Origin: Macrostomum lignano
Taxonomy: Eukaryota
Assembly: GCA_002269645.1 (NCBI GenBank)
Contig: NIVC01004425.1
Location: 1 to 46,520, forward strand
Length of the DNA: 46,520 nucleotides
Direction of reading: 5' to 3'
Below the pieces are notes generated by a model, which ran no database searches, was not told where the DNA came from, and saw nothing but the letters and a program-made list of their open reading frames with translations. Positions 11,561 to 37,749 of this stretch are shown here, one piece after another. The position numbers were made by a program, and so were the translations under genes. Position 1 is the first letter of the stretch. Each line of letters begins with the position of its first letter.

Positions 11561-13480
11561 CTCCGCTAAACTGGACTCAATCAATTTTTTCCGTCAAACA
11601 ACTCAACTCTCCGGATTCATTGGTTAGGGTTAGGGTTAGGGTTAGAACTACGCACAGCTTCGTGTTAAAAGGCACTGATAAACTATTGAACTAATTGAAT
11701 CGATTCATTGCGCAACCGATTTCACAGTCAGTCAGTATCAGTCTCAGTTAAAGTTAACAAAAACATTGCGCAATCTAAATCAACCCTCCAATACAAAGCA
11801 ACTGACCCCCTTCCTATACACAGCGCCAGTTGGAAGTCGAAACCCCCAACTTTATCTCTCACCTCTCGCCAAAATGAGTACAATCTTTGCAGAAAGTTTA
11901 AAGTATGGAAATAGTTTTTGCAATGCAGAGCTTTTAGTTTTCATATTTGAAGCAAACAATTTATATCCCTGAAATCAGCTTTGCAAGTTCTTTCCAGCAA
12001 TATAAATTTTTTCTCTCAAAGTTAAAAACTCGAGCAACAGTTTGCGTTTGAAACTTTCTGATTTAAAGCATTGAAATATCGATTGTACGTTCACTGCCTG
12101 CTAAAGAGGCCCGCAAGTTTATGCATTGAATTTCAACGTTCAACAAAATCACAGGGCTGCCTATTGAAAATTAGAACACAAATCTTTGCGCAATTGTCTA
12201 TACAGTCAGCCAGTGAGCCAGGGTCCGATTGTACACAGGCAGCCATTTAGAACGCCCCATCCCCCCACTGGAGAGAAAATACACTGCAGAGATAGGGAAA
12301 AGTTGTGGCGCAATCACTTGAAATTCATGCAAATTTTCAGCTCCAAGCAGAAAGAGGGGACAATTAAGATTATCAAAGGTCAAGACCGCCGTTTTCTGCT
12401 TTTTTGAGGATTTTAGAAATTAAAATTTCAGAATTAAAATAGCCTATAGCCGACCTCGGATAATTTCCAATCTTCCCATATAAGTTTCAACGCTGAGTTG
12501 CCACTATTCAAGGAGGAGTTGTCGAAATGACAGACAGACACACAGACAGACAGACAAACAACGCGTCAACTTTAGTATATAGAGAGTGGAACTCCTCCTT
12601 CGGAGGAGAAAGGGGAAGAACTCCCATCACCGGAATTCCATTCCCTGAAATATCCATCAACTGAAATTGCATGTCTTGAACCCTATCTTCCAAATCTTCT
12701 CCAATTTTTTTGCAAAACCTTTCAAAGACCATAGCTCAAAGACTTTCATGTCTCTCATATCTCCTCTCTCCTATCTTCGCTATTATCGTGACTCTCTTCT
12801 CTCTCCTCTCTCTCATCTCATATCTACCCCTACTCACTTATTTATCTCTTCTCCCTCGTCTTTCGTCTGTACCCTCTTTTGTCTCTTGTCTTGCTTCTTC
12901 TCTCTTATCTCTCCCTCTTCTCTTCTCTCTCATATGTCATCTCTACTCACTTATCTATCGTCTCTCTTAACCCTCTCTCTCTCTTCCCTTTTCTCTCCTC
13001 TCTGCTCTCATTTCTCAAATCTTATATACGCTCTCACACTCTCACACACACTCTCTCTCACGCTCTTATCCCTCATCTATTCTCTCTCCTATCATCTCTC
13101 CTGTCTCCCTCTGCTATCTCATATCTCCCCTCTCATCTCCTCTCTCCTCTTCTCTTCTCTCTCCCTCTTCATTCTCGCCTTACTCTCCTATTTTCTCCCA
13201 TATGTCATCTCTAATCTCTCCTCTCTCATATCTACTCTTTTCTATAATCTCTTTTCTCTTTTCTCTGACTGACTGAAGGTACCAAATCCTTCGAAATCCT
13301 CCGTCAAATAGAAATCCATCAAAATTCTCTCCGAGAAACAGAAATGTATCAAAATTTTCTTTGGGAAACTGAAAGCCATCAAAATCGTCTCTGTGAAACA
13401 GAACTTTATCAAATAATACATTATATCTACATGACAAAAATATTAAGTTTTTAGTTATATTTATTACATAAATTACATTG

Positions 13481-13728
13481 TCACAAAACACAATCCACAG
13501 CAACCGTTGAAGTCGATAAGCATTAGAAAGCTATGGTAGAGCATCGCAATACATGTTAAGATTGACATCGGAAATAATAGGGAAGGCGGAAATGCTACAC
13601 CAAAAGCGAAGGGCAACGCATTCACTGACGAATGACCAAAAAAGTGACTGACAGGCATGACCGAGAAAGATTACAAAAAGAGAAAGTGCGACTTCCTGGG
13701 AACCCTACTACAGAAGCAGGAGCTATAA
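13481..13728 (+). pseudogene. Decayed inverted copy of the 5' two-thirds of the 143-aa gene
   Basis: Aligns by eye to the reverse complement of ~14015-14299: KK*LTGMTEKDYKKRKCDFLGTLLQKQEL* versus KKRLTDTEAELERKKRECERLEALVQEQEQV. Contains stops and frameshifts, a perfect 23-bp block (13556-13578 = reverse complement of 14198-14220) and AATAAA at 13740-13745. Confidence 0.8.
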
Positions 13729-13875
13729 TTTTATCTTCTAATAAATCGTTTACATCGTAGAAACTAATAATTCTGAATTAATTTTACCATGTTTGATTAA
13801 ACTAACTAAACTAAATAGCTATTAAATAGTATGGTTACATGTGGTCGCAAAAAAGAAAGAAAACAGAAAGTCAGT

Positions 13876-14307
13876 TCAGTTCGCCGCAGCCGGGTCCTCC
13901 TTGGGCGCCGCCGCAGACTCCTCAGCCAGGGTATCGCTCTTGTCGGGCTCGTCCTGGCTGTGGGGTCGCTTGGCTGGTGGTTCCAAATTGAGCTCGACGG
14001 TTGCGAACAGAACTTGCTCCTGCTCTTGCACCAGGGCTTCCAGTCGCTCGCACTCTCTCTTCTTGCGCTCCAGCTCAGCCTCGGTGTCTGTCAGTCGCTT
14101 CTTGTAGTCGTCCAGTTGCTGCCTTTGCTCAGCCACGACTTCGGCGAGTGATGCCTTGCTCTTCGATTCGTGTTGTAGTGTCTCGTGGTCCTCCTGAATT
14201 ATTTCCGATGTCAATCTTAAGAATGTATTGAAGTGCTGCTCCATGGCTTTCTTCTGCTTGTCGAATTTCTCCAGGTTGCTGCCGGATTGTGTTGTGTGAT
14301 GAGCCAT
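13876..14307 (-). CDS. Intronless 143-aa hypothetical protein with a central coiled coil, basic motifs (RKKRE, PPAKRP) and an acidic/Ala tail; embedded in the array
   Basis: ATG to TGA ORF, GC-rich with GC3-biased codons like the eEF2 exons, standing out from AT-rich flanks. Heptad-like E/K/Q/L stretch. No recognisable family. Confidence 0.75.
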   Translation of the reverse strand: MAHHTTQSGSNLEKFDKQKKAMEQHFNTFLRLTSEIIQEDHETLQHESKSKASLAEVVAEQRQQLDDYKKRLTDTEAELERKKRECERLEALVQEQEQVLFATVELNLEPPAKRPHSQDEPDKSDTLAEESAAAPKEDPAAAN

Positions 14308-16422
14308 AAGTTAATTAAGTTAGGTATGTAAATAGAGTAAATTAAGAAAAAAATTTGGACGTTATTTTGGGAACAGATATTTTTTCAGATGAATGGCTGC
14401 TGTCACATTTATCGGGCTAGATTTGCACAGAACTGGTTTAGAACTGGTTGGGGTAGCCAGCTAAAGGTTTTAGCACCTTGAAAAAAATTGACAAAAAGGC
14501 CTGTGTCGAGATCAGGTAGAAAGGTCTGTAGGATTTTTTCATTTACTCGTAGACATTGCAGTCATTGTGTAGGGTAGGCCTGCAGCTGTACACTGTGAGC
14601 GCATAGAGAAAATCCAAGAGTTTGGGGTTGATTGTTAGAGGGTTAAGCTTATTTACGCTATTGAGTCAATACACTGTTGTCGTGGTGGGGGCCGATAGTT
14701 ATTGAGGTGTAAAGGTGCAGAGTGTCATTTTAAAGTTGATAGTTTAAAGTTTAAAGTTTGTTCTGTAGCCTACTGGGCATTCACTGTGTACACTGAACCC
14801 TATCACTTCACCACTCGCCACCCCCGCCACCCCGGCCCCAACACGGGTTATTTGAATTGAATAGTTGTCAGAAAATTTAAAGAATGATTTTTTCTTGAAT
14901 GCTGTGCTTTTTGTTTTCATGTTTAAAGCAAGAAACTTATATCCCCGAACTCAGCGTTGCAAGCTCTTTCCAGCAATATAAGTCTCTTCTCTTAAAGTTT
15001 AAAACTCGTGGAACAGTTGACGTTTGAAATTTACCGATTTCCCGACTGCTTGCCTGAGAGGCTCGCAAGTTTATTCATTGAATTTCACTGCCAAGCTAAT
15101 ACACAGGGCCGATAATAAAACCAATTGAATCTCGACAGTCTATCTATTTACACTGTACAACTGCTATGTACACTCGGCCCAAGCCCTACCCCCGTTCTGG
15201 GGAAACCATTAAATTTAACTCAACCCCCCAACACGCGGGGGGGTTTTATTTGCATTGAACCCAGAACACGCGCACCCACCACCCCCTCAATACACAGCGG
15301 CCCGCGGGCGGAGGTTGGGGTGGCTATTTTTACAAACTGGCTGCAGCCCCAGGCAGAGTAGAAAAAGAAAGTTATTGGGGGTCAAAAAGGCAGTTTTCTG
15401 CTTTTTTGAGGATCTTAGAAATTAAAATTAAAAAAACAGAAATTAAAACAGAAATCCTCTCCGTGAAACTGGACTCAATCGAAAGTTTCTCTGTCAAACA
15501 ACTGAACTCTCAGGATTCAGTGGTTAGGGTTAGGGTTAGAACTACGCACAGCTTCGTGTTAAAAGGCACTGATAAACTATTGAACTAATTGAATCAATTC
15601 ATTGCGCAACCGATTTCACAGTCAGTCAGTATCAGTCTCAGTTAAAGTTAACAAAAACATTGCGCAATCTAAATCAACCCTCCAATACAAAGCAACTGAC
15701 CCCATTCCTATACACAGCGCCAGTTGGAAGTCGAAACCCCCAACTTTATCTCTCACCTCTCGCCAAAATGAGTACAATCTTTGCAGAAAGTTTAAAGTAT
15801 GGAAATAGTTTTTGCAATGCAGAGCTTTTAGTTTTCATATTTGAAGCAAACAATTTATATCCATGAAATCAGCTTTGCAAGTTCTTTCCAGCAATATAAA
15901 TTTTTTCTCTCAAAGTTAAAAACTCGAGCAACAGTTTGCGTTTGAAACTTTCTGATTTAAAGCATTGAAATATCGATTGTACGTTCACTGCCTGCTAAAG
16001 AGGCCCGCAAGTTTATGCATTGAATTTCAACGTTCAACAAAATCACAGGGCTGCCTATTGAAAATTAGAACACAAATCTTTGCGCAATTGTCTATACAGT
16101 CAGCCAGTGAGCCAGGGTCCGATTGTACACAGGCAGCCATTTAGAACGCCCCATCCCCCCACTGGAGAGAAAATACACTGCAGAGATAGGGAAAAGTTGT
16201 GGCGCAATCACTTGAAATTCATGCAAATTTTCAGCTCCAAGCAGAAAGAGGGGACAATTAAGATTATCAAAGGTCAAGACCGCCGTTTTCTGCTTTTTTG
16301 AGGATTTTAGAAATTAAAATTTCAGAATTAAAATAGCCTATAGCCGACCTCGGATAATTTCCAATCTTCCCATATAAGTTTCAACGCTGAGTTGCCACTA
16401 TTCAAGGAGGAGTTGTCGAAAT

Positions 16423-16462
<40 letters not shown>

Positions 16463-17817
16463 ACGCGTCAACTTTAGTATATACGAGTGGAACTCCTCCT
16501 TCGGAGGAGAAAGGGGAAGAACTCCCATCACCGGAATTCCATTCCCTGAAATATCCATCAACTGAAATTTCATGTCTTGAACCCTATCTTCCAAATCGTC
16601 TCCAAATTCTTTACAAAACCTTTCAAAGAACATAGCTCAAAGACTCTCACGTCTCTCATATCTCCTCTCACCTCTGTTCGCTATTATCGTGATCGTGACT
16701 CTCTTCTCTCTCCTCTCTCTCATTTCATCTCTACCCCTACTCCCTTATTTATCTCTTCTCCCTCGTCTTTCGTCTGTACCTTCTCCTGTCTCTTGTCTCC
16801 TCTCTTCTCTCATGTCTCTCCTCTTCACTTCTGTCTCCTGTCTCCTCTCTTCTCTCTTATCTCTCCCTCTTCTCTCCTCTCCTTTCTCCTTTCATCTTAT
16901 CCCCTCTCTTCTCTATACTCTAATCTCTTTTCTCTTATGTTCTCACTCATCTCTTTTCTCATAGCATCTCTCATCTCTCTTCTCCTCACTACTTTCCTCT
17001 CTTAACTCTCTTATCTCTGATCTTTCATCTCTTTTCTCTCTCCTCTCTCTCTTCTCCTCTCGCTTCTCTCTCTCCTCTCTCTCTTCTCATCTCTACTACC
17101 TTATTTATATCTTCTCCCTGGTCTTTCGTCTCTACTCTCTCTTGTCTCATTTCTCCCCTTTTTTCCTCTCTTCTCTCTCCCCTCCTCTCTCATCTCTCAT
17201 CCCTCATCTGACTCTTTCTTTCCCTTCTACTCTCCCTCTCTTCTATTTCCTCTGTACGCTCTTATCTCACATCTCTATTCTCTCTCCTATCATCTCTCTT
17301 GTCTCCCTCTGCTATCTCATATCTCCCCTCTCATCTCCTCTCTCCTCTTCTCTTCTCTCTACTTCGTTCCCGCTTTACTCCCCTCTTCTATCCTATCTGT
17401 CATGTCTAATCTCTCCACTCATTTCTGCTCTGTTTTCTATCATCTCATCTCTCTTCTCTTTTCATTCTTCTCTTTACTCTTTTCTCTGACTGATTGAAGA
17501 TGCCAAATGCTCTCCGCGTAGCAGAAAAATCCTGTCGGTGCAACTGAAAACCATCGAAATCCTCTCCGTGAAACTGGACTCCTTCGAAATCCTCTCCTTG
17601 AAACTTAAATCCATCAAAATCGTCTCCATAAAACAGAAATCAGTCATAAATTATCTCTGCGAAACAGAAATCCTCTCCGTGAAACTGAACACCATCGAAA
17701 TCCTCTCCACGAAACAGAAATCCTCTCCGTCAAAATTAAAACATTGAAATCGTCTCCGCTAAACTGGACTCAATCGAATTTTTTCCGTCAAACAACTCAA
17801 CTCTCCGGATTCATTGG

Positions 17818-20800: not shown

Positions 20801-23243
20801 GTGAAACTGAACACCATGGAAATCCTTTCGTGAAACTGAACATCATCGAAATCCTCTCCACGAAACAGAAATCTTCTCCGTCAGAATTTAAACATTGAAA
20901 TCGTCTCCGCTAAACTTGACTTAATCGAATTTTTTCCGTCAAACAACTCAACTCGCCAGATTCATTAGGGTTAGGGTTAGGGTTAGGGTTAGGGTTAGAA
21001 CTACGCACAGCTTCGTGTTAAAAGGCACAGATAAAAATATTGAACTAATTGAATCAATTCATTGCGCAACCGATTTCACAGTCAGTCAGTATCAGCCTCA
21101 GGTAAAGTTAACAAAAACATTGCGCAATCTAAATCAACCCTCCAATACACAGCAGCAGTGAGAAGTTGAACCCTCCCCCCAACAATCTTTGCAGATTAAA
21201 GTACAATCTTTGCAGAAAGTTAAAAGTATGGAAATAGTTTTTCAAATGCTGTGCTTTTTCTTTTCATATTTAAAGCAAACAACTTATATCCCCGAACTCA
21301 GCGTTGCAAGATCTTTCCAGCAATATAAGTTTCTCCTCTCAAAGTTTAAAACTCGAGGAACAGTTAGCGTTTGAAACTGTCTGATTTATAGCATTGAAGT
21401 ATCGAGTGTACGTTCACTGCCTGCTTGCAAGTTGATGCATTGAATTTCAATGTCCAACAAATACACAGGACGGCCCATTGAAAGGCAGGAAAACTTATCA
21501 GTAGCCATATCATTGCGCAATTATCTATAAAGTCAGCCAGTGAGCCAGGGTCCAAGTGTACACACGCAGCCACTGAGAACGCTCCCACCCCCCACTGGAA
21601 AGAAAATACACTACAGAGATAGGGAAAAGTTGTGGCGCAATCACTAAAAATTCATGCATTTTTCAGCTCCAAGCAGAAAGAGGGGACAATTAAGATTATC
21701 AAAGGTCAAGATTCAAGTTTTCTGCTTTTTTGAGGATCTTAGAAATTAAAATTTCAGAATTAAAATAGCCTATAGCCGACCTCGGATAATTTCCAATCTT
21801 CCCATATAAGTTTCAACGCTGAGTTGCCACTATTCAAGGAGGAGTTGTCGAAATGACAGACAGACACACAGACAGACAGACAAACAACGCGTCAACTTTA
21901 GTATATACGAGTGGAACTCCTCCTTCGGAGGAGAAAGGGGAAGAACTCCCATCACCGGAATTCCATTCCCTGAAATATCCATCAACTGAAATTTCATGTC
22001 TTGAACCCTATCTTCCAAATCGTCTCCAAATTCTTTACAAAACCTTTTAAAGAACATAGCTCAAAGACTCTCACGTCTCTCATATCTCCTCTCACCTCTG
22101 TTCGCTATTATCGTGATCGTGACTCTCTTCTCTCTCCTCTCTCTCATTTCATCTCTACCCCTACTCCCTTATTTATCTCTTCTCCCTCGTCTTTCGTCTG
22201 TACCTTCTCCTGTCTCTTGTCTCCTCTCTTCTCTCATGTCTCTCCTCTTCACTTCTGTCTCCTGTCTCCTCTCTTCTCTCTTATCTCTCCCTCTTCTCTC
22301 CTCTCCTTTCTCCTTTCATCTTATCCCCTCTCTTCTCTATACTCTAATCTCTTTTCTCTTATGTTCTCACTCATCTCTTTTCTCATAGCATCTCTCATCT
22401 CTCTTCTCCTCACTACTTTCCTCTCTTAACTCTCTTATCTCTGATCTTTCATCTCTTTTCTCTCTCCTCTCTCTCTTCTCCTCTCGCTTCTCTCTCTCCT
22501 CTCTCTCTTCTCATCTCTACTACCTTATTTATATCTTCTCCCTGGTCTTTCGTCTCTACTCTCTCTTGTCTCATTTCTCCCCTCTTTTTTCCTCTCTTCT
22601 CTCTCCCCTCCTCTCTCATCTCTCATCCCTCATCTGACTCTTTCTTTCCCTTCTACTCTCCCTCTCTTCTATTTCCTCTGTACGCTCTTATCTCACATCT
22701 CTATTCTCTCTCCTATCATCTCTCTTGTCTCCCTCTGCTATCTCATATCTCCCCTCTCATCTCCTCTCTCCTCTTCTCTTCTCTCTACTTCGTTCCCGCT
22801 TTACTCCCCTCTTCTATCCTATCTGTCATGTCTAATCTCTCCACTCATTTCTGCTCTGTTTTCTATCATCTCATCTCTCTTCTCTTTTCATTCTTCTCTT
22901 TACTCTTTTCTCTGACTGATTGAAGATGCCAAATGCTCTCCGCGTAGCAGAAAAATCCTGTCGGTGCAACTGAAAACCATCGAAATCCTCTCCGTGAAAC
23001 TGGACTCCTTCGAAATCCTCTCCTTGAAACTTAAATCCATCAAAATCGTCTCCATAAAACAGAAATCAGTCATAAATTATCTCTGCGAAACAGAAATCCT
23101 CTCCGTGAAACTGAACACCATCGAAATCCTCTCCACGAAACAGAAATCCTCTCCGTCAAAATTAAAACATTGAAATCGTCTCCGCTAAACTGGACTCAAT
23201 CGAATTTTTTCCGTCAAACAACTCAACTCTCCGGATTCATTGG

Positions 23244-29213: not shown

Positions 29214-31428
29214 GAAGAGAAGACTAACTAAAGTCAATTCGGGGTCAGTTATTGCTATAGTTTTCAAATCTCCTTAAATAATGTCTACTTGAAAAAATAC
29301 AAAATAAACAATGTCAATAGACAATAGGAAAATTATATGATATGGAGTGAGGCAATTTTGTAAGGAGTTTAATTGAAAAAAGTAAATGGATATATAAAAA
29401 ACTTTCAATGTATATAATTAATAACACAAAAAAAGAAAGTAAAATTCTTTCTTTTCGGAAATAGGACCTGCATGTAGGACTTGGTTTATTCATAAATTTA
29501 AAGCATTAGGTAAGCTATTTTATAAATTTTCTAGGCTTACTTTAGCTAGCAGCTAAGTTGTAGTTTATAGCATGCTTTTTATAATCTCTACAGTTCTTAC
29601 ACTATAGAGCGCTATTTATACCTCTGTTATTTCTTGTTACTTACGTAAATTTAACATGTAACACATGGACCAGCTTATTTATTGATAAAAGCGTAATAAA
29701 ATTTCATTAAATGATAATTATTGCAGTTTAGGAAATACTTGCGCCACAAAGTGACATTAACATACGCAATCTCAAGATTACATTCTGCTTAGTTTGAACG
29801 CTTCTTCCGTTTGACATATTTGTTTCTGACAAGAAAGGTCAAGCAAAACAACTGCATAAGTAAGTGAAAAATAAGTGAATTCTCACAGTTTAAATTGTCG
29901 ATACTTGTATTTTGTTTACTCCTTGTCGTGTGTAACTAGAGCAACGTGCTATTAAAACCAATCAGGTTCAACTTAAGCAAGCTCCAAATAAGTTTTTGCG
30001 GTGCATTGGAACAATTTTTTGTTTCATTTAAGTCAAAGATTCCAGTAATTAATTCCATCCATTATACTTTTTCGACATGTCAACCGACACGTTTCATTTT
30101 GCTTTCCAGTTTTTTACTTCTGCATTCTGCCAACCTAGATATTAAAGCCTAGATATTGGAGAGCATTCTTTATTTCTTTTTTAACCTAAATGTATGCAGA
30201 TGAGACTTGTCTTCACGATATAGATGGGCACGTGGTGTTACATGAAATGATGTACATTTTGGATTAGTTCGCGCTTTCCCATATTTTTACAATGCAATTA
30301 CGTAGTAGTAACCGTCGCATGCATAATTTGTCGCTATGCGACTTTAAAGACAAAGATTCAGCTTTGATAGATTTGATGAAGTTATGTAATGATGAAATAC
30401 ATGTACTATAAGCCGCGATTTTAGGCTGGATGCTTAATTTTATATGTAAGAGCGTAAATGGATGTCACTACTGACGCGGTAGGGCACAGCTTTAACACTC
30501 GATTATCTTAGAAATGAGCTGGAGAGGTCGCGGTAAGGAACGTATTTATTCATTATTCTATCGTATTGCTAGTGCATCTATACTATACTATCAATAGAAG
30601 AACAGATACTTCTCGACCAAAGTCGTCTATCGGCGATATTATTTATAATTTCAGCTCATACAGGGTATTGTAAAAATATATGTGTACTCAACTCGTAGCG
30701 TAGTACATCTTTCTACTTCAGTTGTTCATGAAGAGATTCATCAAGCTACATATGTACATAAATAGAAAATATTTGTATGCCTTGTAATTTGAATAAGACT
30801 CAAAATTAGCAAAAATTTATGCGAAAGATTGGGACAAGAGTACAATAGCATTACAGTAAAAGTACACACGTGTATACGCGAGTATGTCAAAACGTCTGAG
30901 CCAAAAAGTTAATTTATTACATACGCAGCGGTCACCGGCATGACTGCAGCAATAAGCATAGACGTTCATGTACGGAATTTTGTATTATTAGAAACTATAA
31001 AAGTTCCAAGCAGCCTATTCCATGTGTCAGCTTGCGTTGCTCCCAAAAGCATATATGTATATATACATGTACAATCTACATGTAAGCTACTATACATTTG
31101 CGTACACCAAAATTTCCATATCAATTCCCCAAGCTAGACCAAACTTCTGCTGACAGTTTCTCAGTCCACCGCAGCAACTCACATTTGCTATAGGAAAGGC
31201 AAGGGCCTGGCGCGTGCGCTGCATACAACAGTGATCGATTTCTAACCCGCTAATGCACGCACAAGTTTGGAGCGACTAACTCACCACGTACAATTTAGGG
31301 GGGTTGTCAAATCCTGGCCCGTTGTGATCAGAGTTTGCACACGATATTCCAAAGTTAAAACCGACTTTTCTTCCAAATTTTGTCGATAGCATTGAATAAC
31401 GCAGAGGCAAATTGAGTATTAAGCAAGT

Positions 31429-32556
31429 CAAGTTTGTGTCCGTAGCTTGAAACTTGCGTGTCCTTAGGTGTCAAGTTTGTGTCCTTAGCTTGAAACTTGC
31501 ATATCCTTAGGTGTCAATTTTGTGTCCTTAGCTTGAAACTTGCGTGTCCTTAGGTGTCAAGTTTGTGTCCTTAGCTTGAAACTTGCATATCCTTAGGTGT
31601 CAATTTTGTGTCCTTAGCTTGAAACTTGCATATCCTTAGGTGTCAATTTTGTGTCCTTAGCTTGAAACTTGCATATCCTTAGGTGTCAATTTTGTGTCCT
31701 TAGCTTGAAACTTGCGTGTCCTTAGGTGACAAGTTTGTGTCCTTAGCTTGAAACTTGCGTCCTTAAGTTGTCAAGTTTGTGTCCTTAGCTTGAAACTTGC
31801 GTCCTCAAGTTGTCAAGTTTGTGTCCTTAGCTTGAAACTTGCGTCCTTAAGTTGTCAAGTTTGTGTCCTTAGCTTGAAACTTGCATATCCTTAGGTGTCA
31901 ATTTTGTGTCCTTAGCTTGAAACTTGCGTGTCCTTAGGTGTCAAGTTTGTGTCCTTAGCTTGAAACTTGCATATCCTTAGGTGTCAATTTTGTGTCCTTA
32001 GCTTGAAACTTGCATATCCTTAGGTGTCAATTTTGTGTCCTTAGCTTGAAACTTGCGTGTCCTTAGGTGACAAGTTTGTGTCCTTAGCTTGAAACTTGCG
32101 TCCTTAAGTTGTCAAGTTTGTGTCCTTAGCTTGAAACTTGCGTCCTTAAGTTATCAATTTTGTGTCCTTAGCTTGAAACTTGCATATCCTTAGGTGTCAA
32201 TTTTGTGTCCTTAGCTTGAAACTTGCGTGTCCTTAAGTTGTCAAGTTTGTGTCCTTAGCTTGAAACTTGCGTCCTTAAGTTATCAAGTTTGTGTCCTTAG
32301 CTTGAAACTTGCGTCCTTAAGTTGTCAAGTTTGTGTCCTTAGCTTGAAACTTGCATATCCTTAGGTGTCAAGTTTGTGTCCGTAGCTTGAAACTTGCGTG
32401 TCCTTAGGTGTCAATTTTGTGTCCTTGGCTTGAAACTTGCGTGTCCTTAGGTGTCAAGTTTGTGTCCTTAGCTTGAAACTTGCGTGTCCTTAGGTGTCAA
32501 GTTTGTGTCCTTGGCTTGTAAATTACGTGTCATTTGGTGACAAGTTTGTGTCCTTA
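31429..32556. repeat. 42-43-bp minisatellite, about 26 copies (CAAGTTTGTGTCCTTAGCTTGAAACTTGCGTGTCCTTAGGTGT)
   Basis: Contiguous tandem units in three sequence variants, with no spacers. Confidence 0.95.
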
Positions 32557-33278
32557 GGAGCCAAGACATTGATTTGATTTCGCATGTAAATAGCATCATT
32601 TTCGCTCTCACGTGCGCGTGAACTTGTGTTTTATGCTCAGTGTACAATCGCTAGTGTACATTGCAAAATCAAATATAAAATATCTCACTTGGCTTTAGCC
32701 ACTTCGTGTTTTCTCGGACTAGCTCAAACCTGCCTTTGGCCTAGTTTACACGCATAACAAAATTATGCATGAAAAATGTCAGTTATGGTCGAGAAAAGAA
32801 AAACAGAAAAACAGTCTTAAAGACAGAAAAATATTGAATATATAATTTTTTTAATCATCATTCTTTCCACAATAACTTGCCTTGCATCACGTCAGCTTTA
32901 TATTAGTAGAGCAACCCAACAACGAAGCCTTAGAGACAAGAACAAACCATATTTTGGGTGCCAAATTTGGGACAAAGATGTGCATTGCGGATTCCACAAA
33001 CCCCGAAGATATTCCTCTCAAAGTTAAATATTTTTTGCAAGAGACAAAGGCCGCATCACCAAATAGTTCTAATTCTCTGTTGTTTTCTTTTCAAAAAATA
33101 TTTTGTCAGATAATTTTATCACTACAAAATCATGAAGTTTACGTAGACTTATATTACGGCAGCTTTGCTCGAGCTGAATCAACTAACAATGATTCCTTCG
33201 TGCCAAAAACCGATACACCCTCAGTTTCTGTTTTAAGTTAGCCAACGAACCCGGTTGCGCAATTGAATACGCAACTTT

Positions 33279-33530
33279 TCACAGCTTGTCCAGGAACCGG
33301 TCCAGCGGCGGGATGCCCTCCTGCAGGCCCTTGCGCTTGCGCGTGTCTATCACGATCTGGCTGGGCTTGGTGCCGGCGGTCAGCGGGTCGCCAGGCATCA
33401 CCTGCCAATGGTCGAACACGCACTGGGGGAAGGCCTGGCCGCCTGTGGCCTGGCGCAGATCCGAGGTGAAGCCGAAGCTCTCGTTAACTGGCAGGTGGGC
33501 CTTCACGATAAACATCGGGGTGCCGGTCAC
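33279..33530 (-). CDS. EEF2: eEF2 exon 6 (VTGTPMF...FLDKL*)
   Basis: Acceptor GAACAG|GTG, stop TGA at 33279-33281. Confidence 0.97.
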
Positions 33531-36500
33531 CTGTTCACGGGATTGATTGGCGCTTGCTGTTAGTGACTGTTGCAATAATGGCATGAATTTAGGGTCAACT
33601 CCTGTTACTATCCGCCATTAAATCCGGATATAAGGGCGATTCCCATGGAATATAAGGGCGATTCCCATGGAATATAAGGGCGATTCCCATGGAATATAAG
33701 GGCGATTCCTATGGAATATAAGGGCGATTCCCATGGAATATAAGGGCGATTCCTATGGAATATAAGGGCGATTCCCATGGAATATAAGGGCGATTCGCAT
33801 GGAATATAAGGGCGATTCCCATGGAATATAAGGGCGATTCCCATGGAATATAAGGGCGATTCGCATGGAATATAAGGGCGATTCCCATGGAATATAAGGG
33901 CGATTCCCATGGAATATAAGGGCGATTCGCATGGAATATAAGGGCGATTCCCATGGAATATAAGGGCGATTCCCATGGAATATAAGGGCGATTCCTATGG
34001 AATATAAGGGCGATTCCTGTAGGAATATAAGGGAAATTCCCATGGGATGTAAGGGCGATTCCTGTAGGAATATAAGGGAAATTCCCATGGAATATAAAGG
34101 CGATTCCTGTAGGAATATAAGGGAGATTCCCATGGGATGTAAGGGCGATTCCCATGGGATATAAGGGCGATTCCCATGAAATATAAGGGTGATTCCTGTA
34201 GGGATATAAGGGCGAATTTCATGGGAAATAAGGGCCATTGTGGCAGGTTTCCATACGAACCCTTGAAGATAGCTAACAAGAGCTGTTTTTATTAACCTGC
34301 TCCTCGGAGTACACCACACCGCGACGACGGTTCAGCACGCCGTAGATGCCGCCGACGGCGTTCTCGGGGCACTGGATCTCACACAGATACACCGGCTCCA
34401 GCAGGGCCGGCTCAGCGGTCAGCACGGCGGCGTAGAAGCAGCGCCGAGCAGTCGGGATAATCTGGCCGCCGCCGCGATGGATAGCGTCGGTGTGCAGCGT
34501 TACGTCGCAGATGTCGAAGCGACAGCCGCGCATGTTTTCGTCGCACATGACGCCCTCCTTGGTGGCCCACTGAAATGCGGCCACAACGCTGTCCTTGATC
34601 TCGGCCAGGTACTGTACACCCTTGGTGACGTCGACAACCAGGTTAGCGCCGTTGGTGTCCGGGCCAAAGCACCAGATCTTGCGAGCCTCGGTCACGTCCC
34701 AGTTGTAGGTGTCGGCAAGGATGCGGCCGCGCTCTTTGGCGTCCTGCCTAGGCGCGATTTTGCCATCGTCGATGTCTTTGGAAAGATCCTCGTCTAGCGG
34801 ACGAGCCTTCATGTACAGCCGGTTGTGCTTGTTGGGCGACTTGGACAGCACCGTCTGCAGTGTAATATTGTAATTCAGTATCAACAACCGGATTGTGAAA
34901 TTGGCCAAATAGTACTCTATGCACTGTGCCTTTCTAGGTTACTGGTCTCTGATCTCATTGTCAGACGGTGAAGACAGGCTTCTAGTCTGAGGACTCTGGT
35001 GCTAGGGAAACTCCTATTGCTAATTAAAGGATAACACACCTGGGTCTGCTTGAGCAATTAACGTCGTTTTAAGGGCTAACCACAAAAGCACACTGAAGTG
35101 TACATGCCAAGCGATAATGGACAGTAATGCCTCTCGCCGGTTTGCCCGACAATGCCACTTAAAGTGCGCCAGGATGCACGCAGCCTCTCTGACTCTAGCA
35201 AAGTAAATAACAAACCTGGTTGCTCTCGTTGGTAACAGTCTCGCGGTACGACACCACGGGATCGCCAGTCTTAATGGGGATCTGGGCGTGATCCTCCTCC
35301 AGATCCTTCAGACAGATCTCCAGATGCAGCTCGCCGGCTCCAGCGATGATGTGCTCGCCAGACTCCTCATTGTAGATCTGCACCATGGGGTCGGACTTGG
35401 CCAGGCGCTTCAGACCCTCGACCAGCTTCGGCAGGTCGGACGGATTCTTGCAGTCAACGGCGACGCGAACGACAGGCGACACGCTGAACTTCATGACGCG
35501 CATGTTGTGCGCAGCGGCGTAGGTGGTGATGGTGCCGGTCTTCACCAGGAACTGGTCGACGCCAACCAGGCCGCAGATGTTGCCACACGGCACGTCCTCG
35601 ATAGGCTCGGTGTAGCGGCCCATCATGAGGATGGTGCGCTGGATGCTCTTCTCAAACAGGTCGTCTTTCTTGCCCGGCGCGAAGTTGGGGCCCATGATTC
35701 GCACCTTGGTGGCGCTCACAACTCCGGAGAACACCCGACCGAAGGCGTAGAATCGACCCTTGTCGGAGGTCGGCACCATCTTCGAGATGTACATCATGAG
35801 CGGCGCTTTCGGATCGCAGGTCTTGATGCCGATGGCGGCCTCGTCATCGTGGGGTCCCTCGTACAGCAGCTCCATGCGGTAGCGCTGGGAGGTCACGGGA
35901 GACGGCAGGTGGATGGCAATCATCTGCAGCAGAGTGTCGCCAGCTGGGAGCCACTTGCGCATCATCACTTTAAGCAGCTGTTTGCCGGTCAGCTCGCGCT
36001 CCTCAGCGTCCAGCTTGATGTTGAGCTTTTCGGCAAGCTTCAGGCCCTCCTCGATCGGCTGGTCCATCACAACGTCAAACATCTGTAGAATGAATCGGTG
36101 AATGTACAATCGATGGTACAGTATATAGCAAGGACAATGCTGAGAAATAAATGTGACAATAAAAACAAAAGTCTTCCACCTGCATCAGAGAACTGAATCC
36201 TCAATAAGATATTTTCAGCCTGGGGCAGTATAAGGTCATCATGTGCAGGTAAAAAATACTTTTTAGATGTTATAGATAAAAGCGCTGACTGGTTTACAGC
36301 TCTGGTCAGACAAACTGAATCATCAATTGCAGCATTTAATTGATTGCATTAGCCTGGGGCAGTATAAGGTCATCACGCATGAGCTGATAAACCAACACGC
36401 GACTAAAAAAACGCATCAATATCTTACCTGGTAGATTGGGTTCAGCACAAACTGGATGAAGCCGCGAACGCACTTGTCGCTCTCCTGAGTCTTCACCCAT

Positions 36501-37749
36501 TTCCTCGTCTCAGTGTTGTAGAAGTTGTCGCCCCACAGACGCTTCATCAGCTTCTCCGGCTCGATCTTGAACTTGGAGGCGTAGATCTCGGCGAACTGCT
36601 TCAGCGTGAAGGCCCAAGCGTGCAGGCCCGAGCCGAAGCCGACGGTGCCCTTCTCCGGCGACACGAAGATGTTGCCCATCGGGCCGCCCTCCTCGCCGAA
36701 CTGGGCGATGATCACGTTGATGTTCTCAACGACTCGCTGGAACTGCTGGTACAGATCCTCCTTGCCCTTCTTGAGCGTCAGCAGCGAGCAGTCCATCTTG
36801 TTCATGAACAGCACCGGCTTGATGCGCTCGGCGATGGCCTGCCGAAGCACCGTCTCCGTCTGCACGCACACGCCAGAGTTGCAGTCCACGACGACAAGGG
36901 CGCCGTCGGTGACGCGCAGAGCGGCGGTCACCTGTTCGTCATAATTAGGCAATAATAATAGCCGATTACTAAAACAATATTCTCTTCAAGACTACCGCAA
37001 AAAAAACAGAAAACTTCACCTGCATCAGAGAACTGAATCCTCAATAAAAATATTTTTCAGCCTGGGGCAGTATAAGGTCATCATGTGCAGGTAACAATAA
37101 TAATTAATAATTTTTCAGCTGGGTGAACTGAAGCAATGCAGAGTTAAGTGTCTTGCTCAAGGACACAAATTGTTTCCAGTGGAAACGGGAATCGAACCCC
37201 CGACCTTTAAGTCGTGAGTCCGACGCTTTGAACACTAGGCTACAACACCTATGTGCAGGTAATTGTGTTGAACTAAGAGTTCAAATAAGGTCATTTACTT
37301 GTACAAATTAGTCGAATAGTGGCTTTGTGTACAGGAGACTCTCCTCTATTTGTTGTCCAAAAGGTCACCTGACAACAACTTACCTCAGAGCTGAAGTCCA
37401 CGTGGCCAGGCGAGTCGATCAGGTTGATCAGAAAGCCGGACTCGTCCGTTCCATCGCTGCGCTTGGACACCTCCTGCAGGGTCTTGACAAACTTCACATC
37501 GGCCTCAGTCAGCTCGTAGTACATGCTAACAGCCGTAGACTTGATGGTAATGCAGCGCTCCTGCTCGTCCTTGCGCGTGTCGGTGAACCTGGTCTCGCCA
37601 GCTCTGGCCGAGGCGATAATGCCAGCCTTGGAGAGAAGAGAGTCGGTCAGGGTCGACTTGCCGTGGTCCACGTGAGCAATGACAGACATGTTGCGGATGT
37701 TCCGCTTGTTGTCCATCATGCCACGGATTTGATTAACAGTGAAGTTCAC
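33279..37749 (-). CDS. EEF2: Eukaryotic translation elongation factor 2, coding exons 2-6 (about 849 aa with the upstream ATG)
   Basis: Contains (M)[10 protein letters not shown]1 [28 protein letters not shown], the diphthamide loop [22 protein letters not shown] and C-terminal FLDKL*. Exons 37384-37749, 36428-36931, 35216-36082, 34297-34854 and 33279-33530 join in frame through GT..AG introns. Confidence 0.98.
33627..34235. repeat. 22-bp minisatellite, about 28 copies (TATAAGGGCGATTCCCATGGAA), in eEF2 intron 5
   Basis: Contiguous tandem units, homogeneous at low coordinates and degenerating above ~34000. Confidence 0.95.
34297..34854 (-). CDS. EEF2: eEF2 exon 5 ([13 protein letters not shown]...SEEQ, 186 codons; includes the diphthamide His)
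   Basis: Acceptor CTGCAG|ACG, donor CAG|GTTAAT. Confidence 0.96.
34922..35050 (-). ncRNA. Candidate box H/ACA snoRNA in eEF2 intron 4
   Basis: About 130 nt: hairpin, H box AGACTA (34983-34988), hairpin (GCCTgTCT/AGAaAGGC lower stem, TCTGA/TCAGA upper stem), then ACA plus 3 nt, ending ~67 nt before the 3' splice site. Pocket spacing is imperfect. Confidence 0.4.
35216..36082 (-). CDS. EEF2: eEF2 exon 4 (MFDVVM...ESNQ, 289 codons)
   Basis: Acceptor CTACAG|ATG, donor CAG|GTTTGT. Confidence 0.96.
36178..36250 (-). ncRNA. Box C/D snoRNA, paralogue A (eEF2 intron 3)
   Basis: ACCTGCAc-ATGATGA(C)-CCTTATACTGCCCCAGG-CTGA(D')-...-TTGAGGA(C')-TTCAGTTCT-CTGA(D)-TGCAGGT, with a 7-bp terminal stem. Confidence 0.85.
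36297..36386 (-). ncRNA. Box C/D snoRNA, paralogue B (eEF2 intron 3)
   Basis: CAGCTC stem-GTGATGA-CCTTATACTGCCCCAGG-CTAA(D')-...-TTGATGA(C')-...-CTGA-cca-GAGCTG. Same guide as paralogue A, different stem. Confidence 0.8.
36428..36931 (-). CDS. EEF2: eEF2 exon 3 ([10 protein letters not shown]...NPIYQ, 168 codons)
   Basis: Acceptor GAACAG|GTG, donor CAG|GTAAGA. Confidence 0.97.
37018..37092 (-). ncRNA. Box C/D snoRNA, paralogue C (eEF2 intron 2)
   Basis: Near-identical to paralogue A; its D box is ~90 nt upstream of the 3' splice site. Confidence 0.85.
37095..37250 (-). mobile_element. Truncated tRNA-derived SINE with a CORE-like segment, (ATT)n tail and 12-bp TSD
   Basis: A-box-like TAGCCTAGTGTT, B box GGTTCGATTCCC (37187-37198), TGTGTCCTTGAGCAAGACACTTAAC. 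Direct repeat ATGTGCAGGTAA at 37083-37094 and 37251-37262. Homologous to 46139-46446. Confidence 0.85.
37384..37749 (-). CDS. EEF2: eEF2 exon 2 (VNFTVN...DFSSE, 122 codons)
   Basis: Acceptor TTTTAG|GTG, donor GAG|GTAAGT. Confidence 0.97.

What the first reader, a model, noticed from the sequence alone, without database searches (positions are those of the whole stretch)
13481..14307. Gene facing its own decayed inverted copy, with a perfect siRNA-sized 23-bp block: candidate hairpin-RNA or self-silencing module inside a satellite
Seen: the intact 143-aa ORF (minus strand) is tail-to-tail with a ~250-bp pseudogenised copy on the plus strand (13481-13728) that carries stops and indels and is roughly two-thirds identical by eye. 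One block, TTAAGATTGACATCGGAAATAAT, is 23/23 identical (13556-13578 versus 14198-14220). The first canonical minus-strand AATAAA I found after the stop codon is at 13460-13465, beyond the inverted copy. Inference: one mRNA could include both arms and fold into a long imperfect hairpin with a ~290-nt loop, as in Drosophila hpRNA/endo-siRNA loci that silence selfish genes (e.g. Nmy/Tmy versus Dox). Convergent transcription (plus-strand AATAAA at 13740) is an alternative dsRNA source. Local gene conversion could also explain the perfect block.
Basis: partly seen in the sequence, partly recalled or inferred. Interest (0 to 1): 0.85.

Follow-up and report, generated by a model that had tools for sequence, protein, structure and literature searches.

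The report
Flatworm gene beside its decayed inverted copy
A small orphan coiled-coil gene of the flatworm Macrostomum lignano has a decayed, inverted copy of its own first two-thirds just downstream, so its mRNA could fold back on itself, but the sequence tests possible here point to a decaying duplication relic, not a maintained RNA-silencing device.

Summary
The ORF at 13876-14307 (minus strand, 143 aa) lies tail-to-tail with an inverted, pseudogenised copy of its CDS nt 9-292 at 13481-13723. The arms are 81% identical without gaps and 67% with gaps. They include a perfect 23-mer (13556-13578 / 14198-14220). On the mRNA strand the first AATAAA after the stop lies just beyond the copy.

The window is a whole contig of Macrostomum lignano (Mlig_3_7), not a fly. 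The gene is a lineage-restricted single long helix under purifying selection (dN/dS about 0.3). It sits in a ~2-kb insert inside a complex satellite.

A transcript spanning both arms would fold into a bulged hairpin (z about -18). Only two helices reach 19 bp.

Nothing shows that pairing is maintained:
- Wobble-compatible changes are symmetric (12 vs 11).
- Indels are deletion-biased.
- All frames of the copy carry stops.
- The 23-nt run is only modestly unusual (p about 0.03).
- The block already differs by one base in a 91%-identical relative.

The three other genomic copies are more than 99% identical, so they say nothing about conservation.

Most likely this is a fold-back partial duplication decaying inside the gene's 3' UTR. 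An hpRNA-like self-silencing role remains possible (about 0.2-0.25) and can be tested with published small-RNA data.

The parts
13876..14307 (-). Intact 143-aa ORF. It is a lineage-restricted protein predicted as one long alpha-helix (residues 5-107) with a disordered acidic tail.
   Evidence: ORF listed. No Pfam family above its cut-off. The only relatives are one 90% cluster and one marginal coiled-coil hit. AlphaFold2 gives helix 5-107 with pLDDT above 93. dN/dS is 0.30 against the ENA relative, with no indels and 11 synonymous of 24 changes (p=0.006).
14016..14299 (-). Gene arm of the inverted repeat (CDS nt 9-292, codons 3-97).
   Evidence: Alignment; inverted pairs I1-I5.
13481..13723 (+). 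Decoy arm: a decayed inverted copy of CDS nt 9-292, with stops in all frames and a net 41-nt shortening.
   Evidence: No extension of homology beyond either end.
13556..13578 (+). Perfect 23-nt block in the decoy arm.
   Evidence: It forms the longest helix in the MFE structure.
14198..14220 (-). Perfect 23-nt block in the gene arm (codons for L-R-L-T-S-E-I-I). It is 22/23 in the ENA relative (A to G, Ile36Met).
13673..13691 (+). Second-longest predicted helix (19 bp, including G:U pairs), pairing with 14048-14066.
13724..14015 (-). Loop of the potential hairpin (292 nt): the last 140 nt of the CDS plus 152 nt of AT-rich 3' flank.
13460..13465 (-). First canonical AATAAA on the mRNA strand, 410 nt after the stop and 15 nt beyond the decoy arm. 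The predicted cleavage zone coincides with the unique/satellite boundary at 13442.
13442..15439 (.). A ~2-kb insert that interrupts the 30-nt minisatellite of one satellite unit. It holds the decoy, the gene, 560 bp of upstream sequence, a D9-family repeat copy (14869-15131) and more unique sequence. There are no TIRs, TSDs or poly(A) tail.

Best explanation
This is a decaying fold-back (inverted, tail-to-tail) partial duplication of a real, lineage-restricted coiled-coil gene of Macrostomum lignano.

Origin (inferred): a local replication or repair template switch copied the helix-coding CDS nt 9-292 in inverted orientation to a point 152 bp past the stop codon. The copy included no promoter, start codon or 3' end.

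Since then (shown): the copy has decayed like non-functional DNA. It has 19% substitutions, 19 indel events that are mostly deletions, drift toward AT, and stops in every frame. The gene itself stayed under purifying selection.

Consequence (inferred): no canonical poly(A) signal lies between the stop and the copy, and the first AATAAA lies 15 nt beyond it. The copy is therefore probably part of the gene's 3' UTR. The mRNA can then fold back into a heavily bulged ~240-nt stem, which may yield some small RNAs as a by-product.

I consider the present arrangement a relic without a selected function. The perfect 23-mer is best explained by chance survival or a short gene-conversion tract.

The four near-identical copies in the assembly reflect the redundancy of this neopolyploid genome, not conservation.
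For: - The arms are real and collinear, end sharply, and are symmetric about the stop-codon region, as expected for a fold-back duplication.
- The decay pattern is neutral. There are 15 deletions against 4 insertions in the decoy. GC is 44% in the decoy against 52% in the gene arm. ts:tv is 23:21. Substitutions are spread over codon positions 15/11/18.
- There is no strand asymmetry of wobble-compatible changes (12 vs 11, p=1.0).
- The stem is fragmented: 204 pairs in 35 helices, only two of at least 19 bp.
- The 23-nt run has p about 0.027 under uniform decay when gap events count as single breaks.
- The block is not invariant in the relative's gene arm.
- The gene is real. Its ORF is intact in a 91%-identical relative, with dN/dS 0.30 and p=0.006. 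GenBank models of this assembly derive from RNA-seq transcripts (PMC5730564).
- The copies L002, L003 and L005 are more than 99% identical through the module. The assembly is known to hold 180-312 Mb of duplicated blocks at least 95% identical (PMC5730564).
- The feature is not an assembly artefact. It occurs on four separate contigs, and its arms are diverged, not perfect palindromes.
Against: - The run of 23 is still longer than expected (p 0.003-0.03). The next longest run is 10.
- The decoy carries the M. lignano state at 8 of 8 informative sites. This suggests either a recent origin or gene conversion, meaning the arms interact.
- The arrangement has persisted for a time comparable to a species split without being deleted, although long inverted repeats are usually unstable.
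- The poly(A) signal sits just past the decoy, so the decoy is probably transcribed together with the gene.
- No expression or small-RNA data could be examined. Absence of function is therefore an inference from sequence only, based on small numbers.
Confidence: 0.55

Rival explanations
1. hpRNA-like self-silencing module. The gene's mRNA reads through the decoy and folds into a long imperfect hairpin. Dicer processes it into endo-siRNAs, possibly amplified by the M. lignano RdRPs. These limit expression of the gene in cis and of its three other genomic copies in trans.
For: - The hairpin is strongly favoured on the mRNA strand (dG -358, z -18.8).
- It contains a perfect 23-bp helix and a 19-bp helix.
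- There is no canonical poly(A) signal before the decoy, and an AATAAA lies 15 nt after it.
- M. lignano encodes Dicer, about 13 Ago-clade paralogs and four RdRPs (PMC5594548).
- The 23-nt run exceeds neutral expectation (p 0.003-0.03).
- The decoy tracks M. lignano-specific states at 8 of 8 sites.
- All four assembly copies keep the arrangement.
- Precedent exists. Drosophila hpRNAs arise from inverted fragments of their targets, sometimes next to the progenitor gene or inside a 3' UTR (PMC10317233).
Against: - There is no signature of selection for pairing (12 vs 11 wobble-compatible changes, deletion-biased indels).
- Arm identity (81% ungapped, 67% with gaps) is low, and the stem is broken into 35 helices.
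- The block is 22/23 in the relative's gene arm.
- There is no separate target: the gene has no diverged paralogs.
- The gene is itself under purifying selection, which sits badly with constitutive self-destruction.
- The four copies are too similar to count as conservation.
- hpRNAs have not been described in M. lignano (PMC4604429).
Confidence: 0.22
2. The decoy is transcribed on its own from the plus strand (convergent transcription ending near the plus-strand AATAAA at 13740) and acts as a short antisense-free decoy or natural antisense partner. Alternatively, the locus is read as part of a satellite-embedded piRNA cluster, so that small RNAs against the gene are piRNAs and not siRNAs.
For: - A plus-strand AATAAA lies 17 nt after the end of the decoy arm.
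- The module lies inside a 29-kb satellite array, and such arrays are common piRNA sources.
- M. lignano has abundant piRNAs and PIWI proteins (PMC4604429).
Against: - The AATAAA lies in 75% AT sequence, where the hexamer is expected by chance.
- No promoter evidence exists for the plus strand.
- A plus-strand decoy transcript has the same sense as the mRNA, so it is not complementary to it. It would pair only with antisense transcripts.
- Nothing here could be tested.
Confidence: 0.08
3. The module is cargo of a mobile element (Helitron gene capture, a foldback or TIR transposon, or a retrocopy), and the inverted fragment is a by-product of capture.
For: - Three of the four copies lie ~0.7 kb from a ~9-kb segment encoding a Helitron Rep/helicase.
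- The module is a foreign ~2-kb insert within a minisatellite.
Against: - The window copy has the module without the Helitron.
- A satellite fragment and a D9-family repeat separate the two.
- No TIRs, TSDs or poly(A) tail flank the insert.
- The protein family has no additional dispersed copies.
- Flanking satellite is co-duplicated at 95-97% identity, as expected for segmental or homeologous copies and not for transposition.
Confidence: 0.07

Closest known systems
Drosophila hairpin RNA (hpRNA) loci, e.g. hp58, hp88, Nmy/Tmy (PMC10317233; PMC10292708)
   Same: Both have an inverted repeat derived from a fragment of a protein-coding gene. Both lie near the progenitor or inside a 3' UTR. Both contain stretches of perfect complementarity of siRNA length. 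The target is an evolutionarily young, lineage-restricted gene.
   Different: In Drosophila both arms are non-coding copies in a dedicated transcript separate from the target, and the arms are usually highly complementary. hpRNA status there is defined by Dcr-2-dependent 21-nt siRNAs and de-repression in mutants. Here one arm is the intact gene itself, the arms are only 81% (ungapped) or 67% (with gaps) identical, the host is a flatworm, and no small-RNA or genetic evidence exists.
Mouse oocyte endo-siRNA sources from inverted-repeat pseudogenes and gene/pseudogene pairs (Tam et al. 2008; Watanabe et al. 2008; cited from my own knowledge)
   Same: In both, a pseudogenised copy in inverted orientation provides dsRNA that matches a functional parent gene.
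   Different: The mouse hairpins are formed by two pseudogene copies, or in trans between pseudogene antisense RNA and the parent mRNA. They were defined by sequenced siRNAs. Here the pairing would be intramolecular, between CDS and 3' UTR, and is untested.
Plant proto-MIRNA genes formed by inverted duplication of target genes (Allen et al. 2004; cited from my own knowledge)
   Same: The origin model is the same: an inverted duplication of part of a gene, followed by decay that leaves only short islands of perfect complementarity.
   Different: This is a different kingdom with different processing. Plant loci are separate from their targets. Here the decay leaves one 23-nt island, but there is no evidence of processing.
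Ordinary fold-back or template-switch inverted partial gene duplications (non-functional relics)
   Same: Shared features are the tail-to-tail geometry with a short spacer, a copy that contains an internal CDS fragment only, and neutral deletion-biased decay.
   Different: The only differences are the modestly over-long perfect block and the likely inclusion of the copy in the 3' UTR.

Membership tests
hpRNA / endo-siRNA hairpin locus (Drosophila definition) | A long inverted repeat able to form an intramolecular RNA duplex | tested here: met
   Arms of 243 and 284 nt. The MFE structure pairs 204 nt between the arms, z -18.8. The duplex is poor: 35 helices, only two of at least 19 bp.
hpRNA / endo-siRNA hairpin locus (Drosophila definition) | [quoted passage not shown] | tested here: inconclusive
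   Only signal-based evidence is available. There is no AATAAA or ATTAAA between the stop and 13465, and the first AATAAA lies 15 nt beyond the decoy. No transcript-end data could be read.
hpRNA / endo-siRNA hairpin locus (Drosophila definition) | Dicer-dependent ~21-nt small RNAs from the duplex arms | not testable with these tools
   No small-RNA read data are accessible. Libraries exist for M. lignano (PMC4604429).
hpRNA / endo-siRNA hairpin locus (Drosophila definition) | The primary transcript and the target are de-repressed in RNAi-pathway mutants or knock-downs | not testable with these tools
   This requires an experiment.
hpRNA / endo-siRNA hairpin locus (Drosophila definition) | siRNA-length stretches fully complementary to a target mRNA | tested here: met
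   The 23/23 block lies at 13556-13578 and 14198-14220. The only target is the host gene itself and its near-identical copies.
hpRNA / endo-siRNA hairpin locus (Drosophila definition) | Evolutionary maintenance of pairing (compensatory or wobble-preserving change, or conservation above the neutral level) | tested here: not met
   Wobble-compatible changes are 12 vs 11. Indels are deletion-biased. The block is 22/23 in the relative. Within-genome copies are uninformative. Numbers are small.
Processed pseudogene / retrocopy | A copy of a mature mRNA with a poly(A) tail and target-site duplications | tested here: not met
   The decoy is an internal CDS fragment (nt 9-292) with sharp ends, no poly(A) tract and no TSD.
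Helitron-captured gene fragment | The fragment lies between the Helitron termini and moves with the element | tested here: not met
   The window copy has the module but no Helitron. In L003 a satellite fragment and a D9 repeat separate the two. Helitron termini were not mapped.
TIR or foldback DNA transposon | Terminal inverted repeats and target-site duplication at the insert ends | tested here: not met
   No alignment of the termini exceeds shuffles for any candidate right end (14868, 15031, 15131, 15439).
Protein-coding gene (as opposed to a chance ORF) | The ORF is conserved with an excess of synonymous change in a diverged relative, and there is transcript support | tested here: met
   dN/dS is 0.30, 11 of 24 changes are synonymous (p=0.006), and there are no indels. 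The GenBank models are RNA-seq derived. One of the four copies is frameshifted.

The most novel reading that the evidence does not exclude
This is the first hairpin-RNA type endo-siRNA locus in a flatworm, and an unusual one. The sense arm is the intact coding sequence of a functional gene and the antisense arm lies in its own 3' UTR. Each mRNA would then be both message and Dicer substrate, forming a built-in negative feedback or dosage limiter. M. lignano RdRPs could amplify it, and it could act in trans on the homeologous copies of a neopolyploid genome. The 23-nt perfect island and the 8/8 sharing of lineage-specific states would then reflect selection or gene conversion that keeps a minimal trigger.
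Probability: 0.15. Interest if true: 0.65.

Novelty: new member of a known kind. Interest (0 to 1): 0.3.

Why it matters
If the hairpin is processed, it would extend gene-derived hpRNA regulation, so far documented mainly in Drosophila testis, to a spiralian that has RdRPs. It would also show an early or late stage of hpRNA evolution in which the target gene itself is one arm. That bears on how endo-siRNA loci are born from inverted duplications and how genes escape self-silencing. If it is a relic, as I think more likely, it is an ordinary product of fold-back duplication. Its main value is then as a cautionary example. Near-identical 'copies' in a redundant neopolyploid assembly are not evidence of conservation, and a single perfect siRNA-sized block inside an 81%-identical repeat is only weakly significant.

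Tried and rejected
1. Pfam, PDB-sequence, word-indexed and exhaustive HMMER searches for relatives of the ORF found only its own 90% cluster and one marginal coiled-coil hit. No family assignment is possible.
2. A metagenome-contig scan for the 20-nt core of the block gave four hits that share only the 20-mer, so they are chance matches.
3. A protein search with the 61-aa ORF that runs through the decoy arm, meant to find the decoy in relatives or transcripts, found nothing.
4. Rfam at gathering thresholds found no RNA family in the window.
5. The three other genomic copies could not serve as a conservation test. They are more than 99% identical throughout.
6. I tested whether the 29-bp deletion in copy L005 was templated by the decoy arm, which would be gene conversion. 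It was not.
7. Tests for TIRs, TSDs or a poly(A) tail at the insert ends were negative.
8. The sample accession of the ENA relative does not appear in the literature library, so the taxon of the outgroup is unknown.
9. An assembly artefact (palindromic chimeric reads) is rejected. The arms are diverged, and the structure recurs on four contigs.
10. I did not run a fold search on the predicted single long helix, because such matches are uninformative.

Full report
**1. What is in the sequence**

- An intact 143-codon ORF lies on the minus strand at 13876-14307.
- The repeat finder reports five collinear inverted segments (I1-I5) between 13481-13723 and 14016-14299, including a perfect 23-nt pair with 619 nt between its two copies.
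- A gapped alignment joins these segments into one arm pair: 13481-13723 (+) against 14299-14016, which is CDS nt 9-292.
  - It has 193 matches, 44 mismatches and 19 gap events covering 53 columns.
  - Identity is 81% over ungapped columns and 67% over all columns.
  - The score is 188, against 38 +/- 7 for shuffled sequence.
- Homology stops sharply at both ends of the arms.
- The copy has stop codons in all three frames.
- The 23-mer occurs exactly twice in the 46.5-kb window, and never in 100 shuffles, even with up to three mismatches allowed.
- The spacer between the arms is 292 nt: the last 140 nt of the CDS plus 152 nt of AT-rich flank.
- On the mRNA strand there is no AATAAA or ATTAAA between the stop and 13465-13460. 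Only AATTAA at 13783 and GATAAA at 13735 occur. The plus strand has AATAAA at 13740.

**2. How unusual is the perfect block?**

- If every alignment column is treated as independent, a run of at least 23 has probability 0.003-0.008.
- If each gap event counts as a single break (63 breaks among 193 matches), the probability is 0.027.
- The next longest run is 10.
- The block is therefore longer than expected, but not dramatically so.

**3. Where the window comes from**

- The exact protein is also encoded on two other contigs of assembly GCA_002269645.1. Papers identify that assembly as Macrostomum lignano Mlig_3_7.
- The window is a whole 46,520-bp contig of that assembly.
- The organism is a free-living, neopolyploid flatworm, not an insect.
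- The assembly paper states that it contains 180 Mb of duplicated non-repetitive blocks at least 95% identical, rising to 312 Mb when repeats are included. It also states that the GenBank gene models derive from RNA-seq transcript assemblies (PMC5730564). Annotated proteins at these loci therefore imply transcription.

**4. The gene**

- No Pfam family reaches its cut-off.
- A word-indexed search finds one 90% cluster.
- An exhaustive HMMER search of 1.8 billion representatives finds only a truncated copy and one marginal coiled-coil hit.
- PDB sequences give nothing.
- AlphaFold2 predicts a single long helix (residues 5-107, pLDDT above 93) followed by a disordered acidic tail.
- Two metagenome assemblies in ENA contain a 595-bp contig that is 91% identical in DNA and 92% in protein.
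- Against this relative the ORF has no indels. It shows 11 synonymous and 13 non-synonymous changes and dN/dS of 0.30. The excess of synonymous change has p=0.006.
- It is therefore a real, lineage-restricted protein-coding gene. The decoy arm copies almost exactly its helix-coding part.

**5. Context**

- Positions 1-29.2 kb form a complex satellite. Its units are built of TC-rich blocks, a 30-nt minisatellite, short TTAGGG runs and tetranucleotide runs.
- The segment 13442-14868 is unique within the window.
- Comparison with an 'empty' unit shows that about 2 kb (13442-15439) interrupts the 30-nt minisatellite.
- The insert has no terminal inverted repeats, target-site duplication or poly(A) tail.
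- Its left edge lies about 20 nt beyond the AATAAA.

**6. Other copies**

- The assembly holds four copies: the window, L002, L003 and L005.
  - L002 and L003 came from the exact-protein look-up and were aligned.
  - L005 came from looking up the truncated 67-aa hit and was aligned.
- Through the module they differ at only a handful of positions, so they are more than 99% identical. All keep both 23-mers.
- L005 has a 29-bp deletion in the gene arm that frameshifts the ORF to 67 aa. The deletion is not templated by the decoy.
- Beyond window position 15031, L002, L003 and L005 carry a ~9-kb segment encoding a Helitron Rep/helicase that the window lacks.
- Flanking satellite is co-duplicated at 95-97% identity.
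- These are segmental or homeologous copies of one locus. Their agreement on the 23-mer says nothing about selection.

**7. Would it fold?**

Yes, trivially.

- The mRNA-sense strand of 13440-14340 has an MFE of -358 kcal/mol, against -232 +/- 7 for shuffles (z -18.8). The opposite strand gives -362 (z -17.7).
- In the MFE structure, 204 base pairs (17 of them G:U) connect the arms in 35 helices.
- Only two helices reach 19 bp: the perfect 23-mer, and 14048-14066 paired with 13673-13691.
- This shows the capacity to form bulged dsRNA. It does not show that such dsRNA is used.

**8. Tests for maintained pairing**

- *Wobble asymmetry.* In an RNA hairpin, transitions that create G:U pairs are tolerated on the transcribed strand only. 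The counts are 12 changes compatible with the mRNA-sense transcript and 11 compatible with the antisense transcript (p=1.0). The ts:tv ratio is 23:21.
- *Indels.* The decoy has 15 deletions against 4 insertions, the usual pseudogene bias. It has also drifted from 52% to 44% GC.
- *Codon positions.* Substitutions are spread evenly, 15/11/18.
- *The relative.* Its gene arm has one substitution inside the block, A to G, giving Ile36Met.
- None of these tests indicates selection for pairing. All rest on small numbers.

**9. An unresolved point**

- The M. lignano gene and the relative differ at eight sites where the decoy matches one of the two. At all eight the decoy carries the M. lignano state (sign test 0.004). 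This suggests that the copy was made, or was last converted, after the split.
- Yet divergence between the arms is 18.6% plus 19 indels. This equals or exceeds the total non-coding divergence between the two taxa, which is 10% in the 3' flank and 19% in the 5' flank. That suggests an origin at or before the split.
- Possible explanations are short-tract gene conversion (which would also explain the perfect block), unequal rates in the two lineages, or an error-prone origin.
- One 595-bp outgroup cannot decide between them.

**10. Interpretation**

The geometry is that of a fold-back or template-switch partial duplication. The copy is an internal CDS fragment, inverted, a short distance past the stop, and symmetric about the stop region.

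- *Best-supported reading (about 0.55).* The duplicate is a decaying relic that now lies in the gene's 3' UTR. It may yield some small RNAs as a by-product but has no selected function.
- *hpRNA-like self-silencing (about 0.22).* This remains open.
  - In its favour: the poly(A) signal arrangement, the 23-bp and 19-bp helices, the 8/8 result, and the presence of Dicer, about 13 Ago-clade genes and four RdRPs in M. lignano (PMC5594548).
  - It differs from Drosophila hpRNAs (PMC10317233) because one arm is the functional gene itself and no separate target exists.
- *Independent plus-strand transcription or piRNA-cluster reading (0.08).* Possible but untested.
- *Mobile-element cargo (0.07).* Less likely, for the reasons given in sections 5 and 6.

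**11. Verdict**

- The feature is a new member of a known kind.
- Interest is moderate to low, because public small-RNA and 3'-end data for this species could settle the question quickly.

Noticed in passing
window 1-29200: A complex satellite array. Its units (2.6-5.4 kb) combine TC-rich low-complexity blocks, a 30-nt minisatellite (GAAATCCTCTCCGTGAAACTGAA...), short interstitial TTAGGG runs and (GACA)n/(TAGA)n runs. Some 5.4-kb units are 100% identical over the stretches compared (e.g. 17507-17806 vs 22933-23232).
   Followed up: partly
L003 278-9274 (also L002 213-9120 and L005 162-9117); breakpoint at window 15031/15032: Three of the four assembly copies of the module adjoin a ~9-kb segment encoding a 1468-aa Helitron Rep/helicase (Helitron_like_N + PIF1). 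The window copy lacks it. In L003 D9-family repeat copies flank the segment on both sides. Helitron termini were not mapped.
   Followed up: partly
L005 10001-10204 (NIVC01000413.1, positions 334708-354911); equivalent to window 14092-14120: A fourth copy of the gene carries a 29-bp deletion with adjacent base changes, which frameshifts the ORF to 67 aa. This is a disrupted paralog inside a 625-kb contig. The deletion is not templated by the decoy arm.
   Followed up: yes
window 13876-14307: The GenBank protein model on this contig is 122 aa (starting at Met22). The identical DNA on two other contigs is annotated as 143 aa. This is probably a truncated transcript model caused by multi-mapping reads.
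   Followed up: no
window 33282-37749 (minus strand): An intron-containing elongation factor 2 gene, with domains GTP_EFTU, D2, EFG_III, EFG_IV and EFG_C. A 22-nt tandem array (33628-34239, ~28 copies, 89% matches) lies in its last intron.
   Followed up: partly
window 31427-32557 and 41904-42280: A 43-nt tandem array (26 copies, 92% matches, with a 470-nt higher-order period) and a 192-nt tandem duplication. Function unknown.
   Followed up: no
L001, L004 (ENA ERZ27309172, ERZ28655790): Two metagenome assemblies contain the same 595-bp contig (the two differ by 1 nt) with a 92%-identical ORF. It presumably comes from a related Macrostomum-like flatworm in an environmental sample. The contig ends 58 nt after the stop, so it cannot show whether the decoy exists there.
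   Followed up: partly
window 13481-13723 vs L001: The decoy arm shares the M. lignano state at 8 of 8 informative sites, yet it is as diverged from the gene arm as non-coding DNA is between the two taxa. The age of the duplication, or a role for gene conversion, is unresolved.
   Followed up: partly
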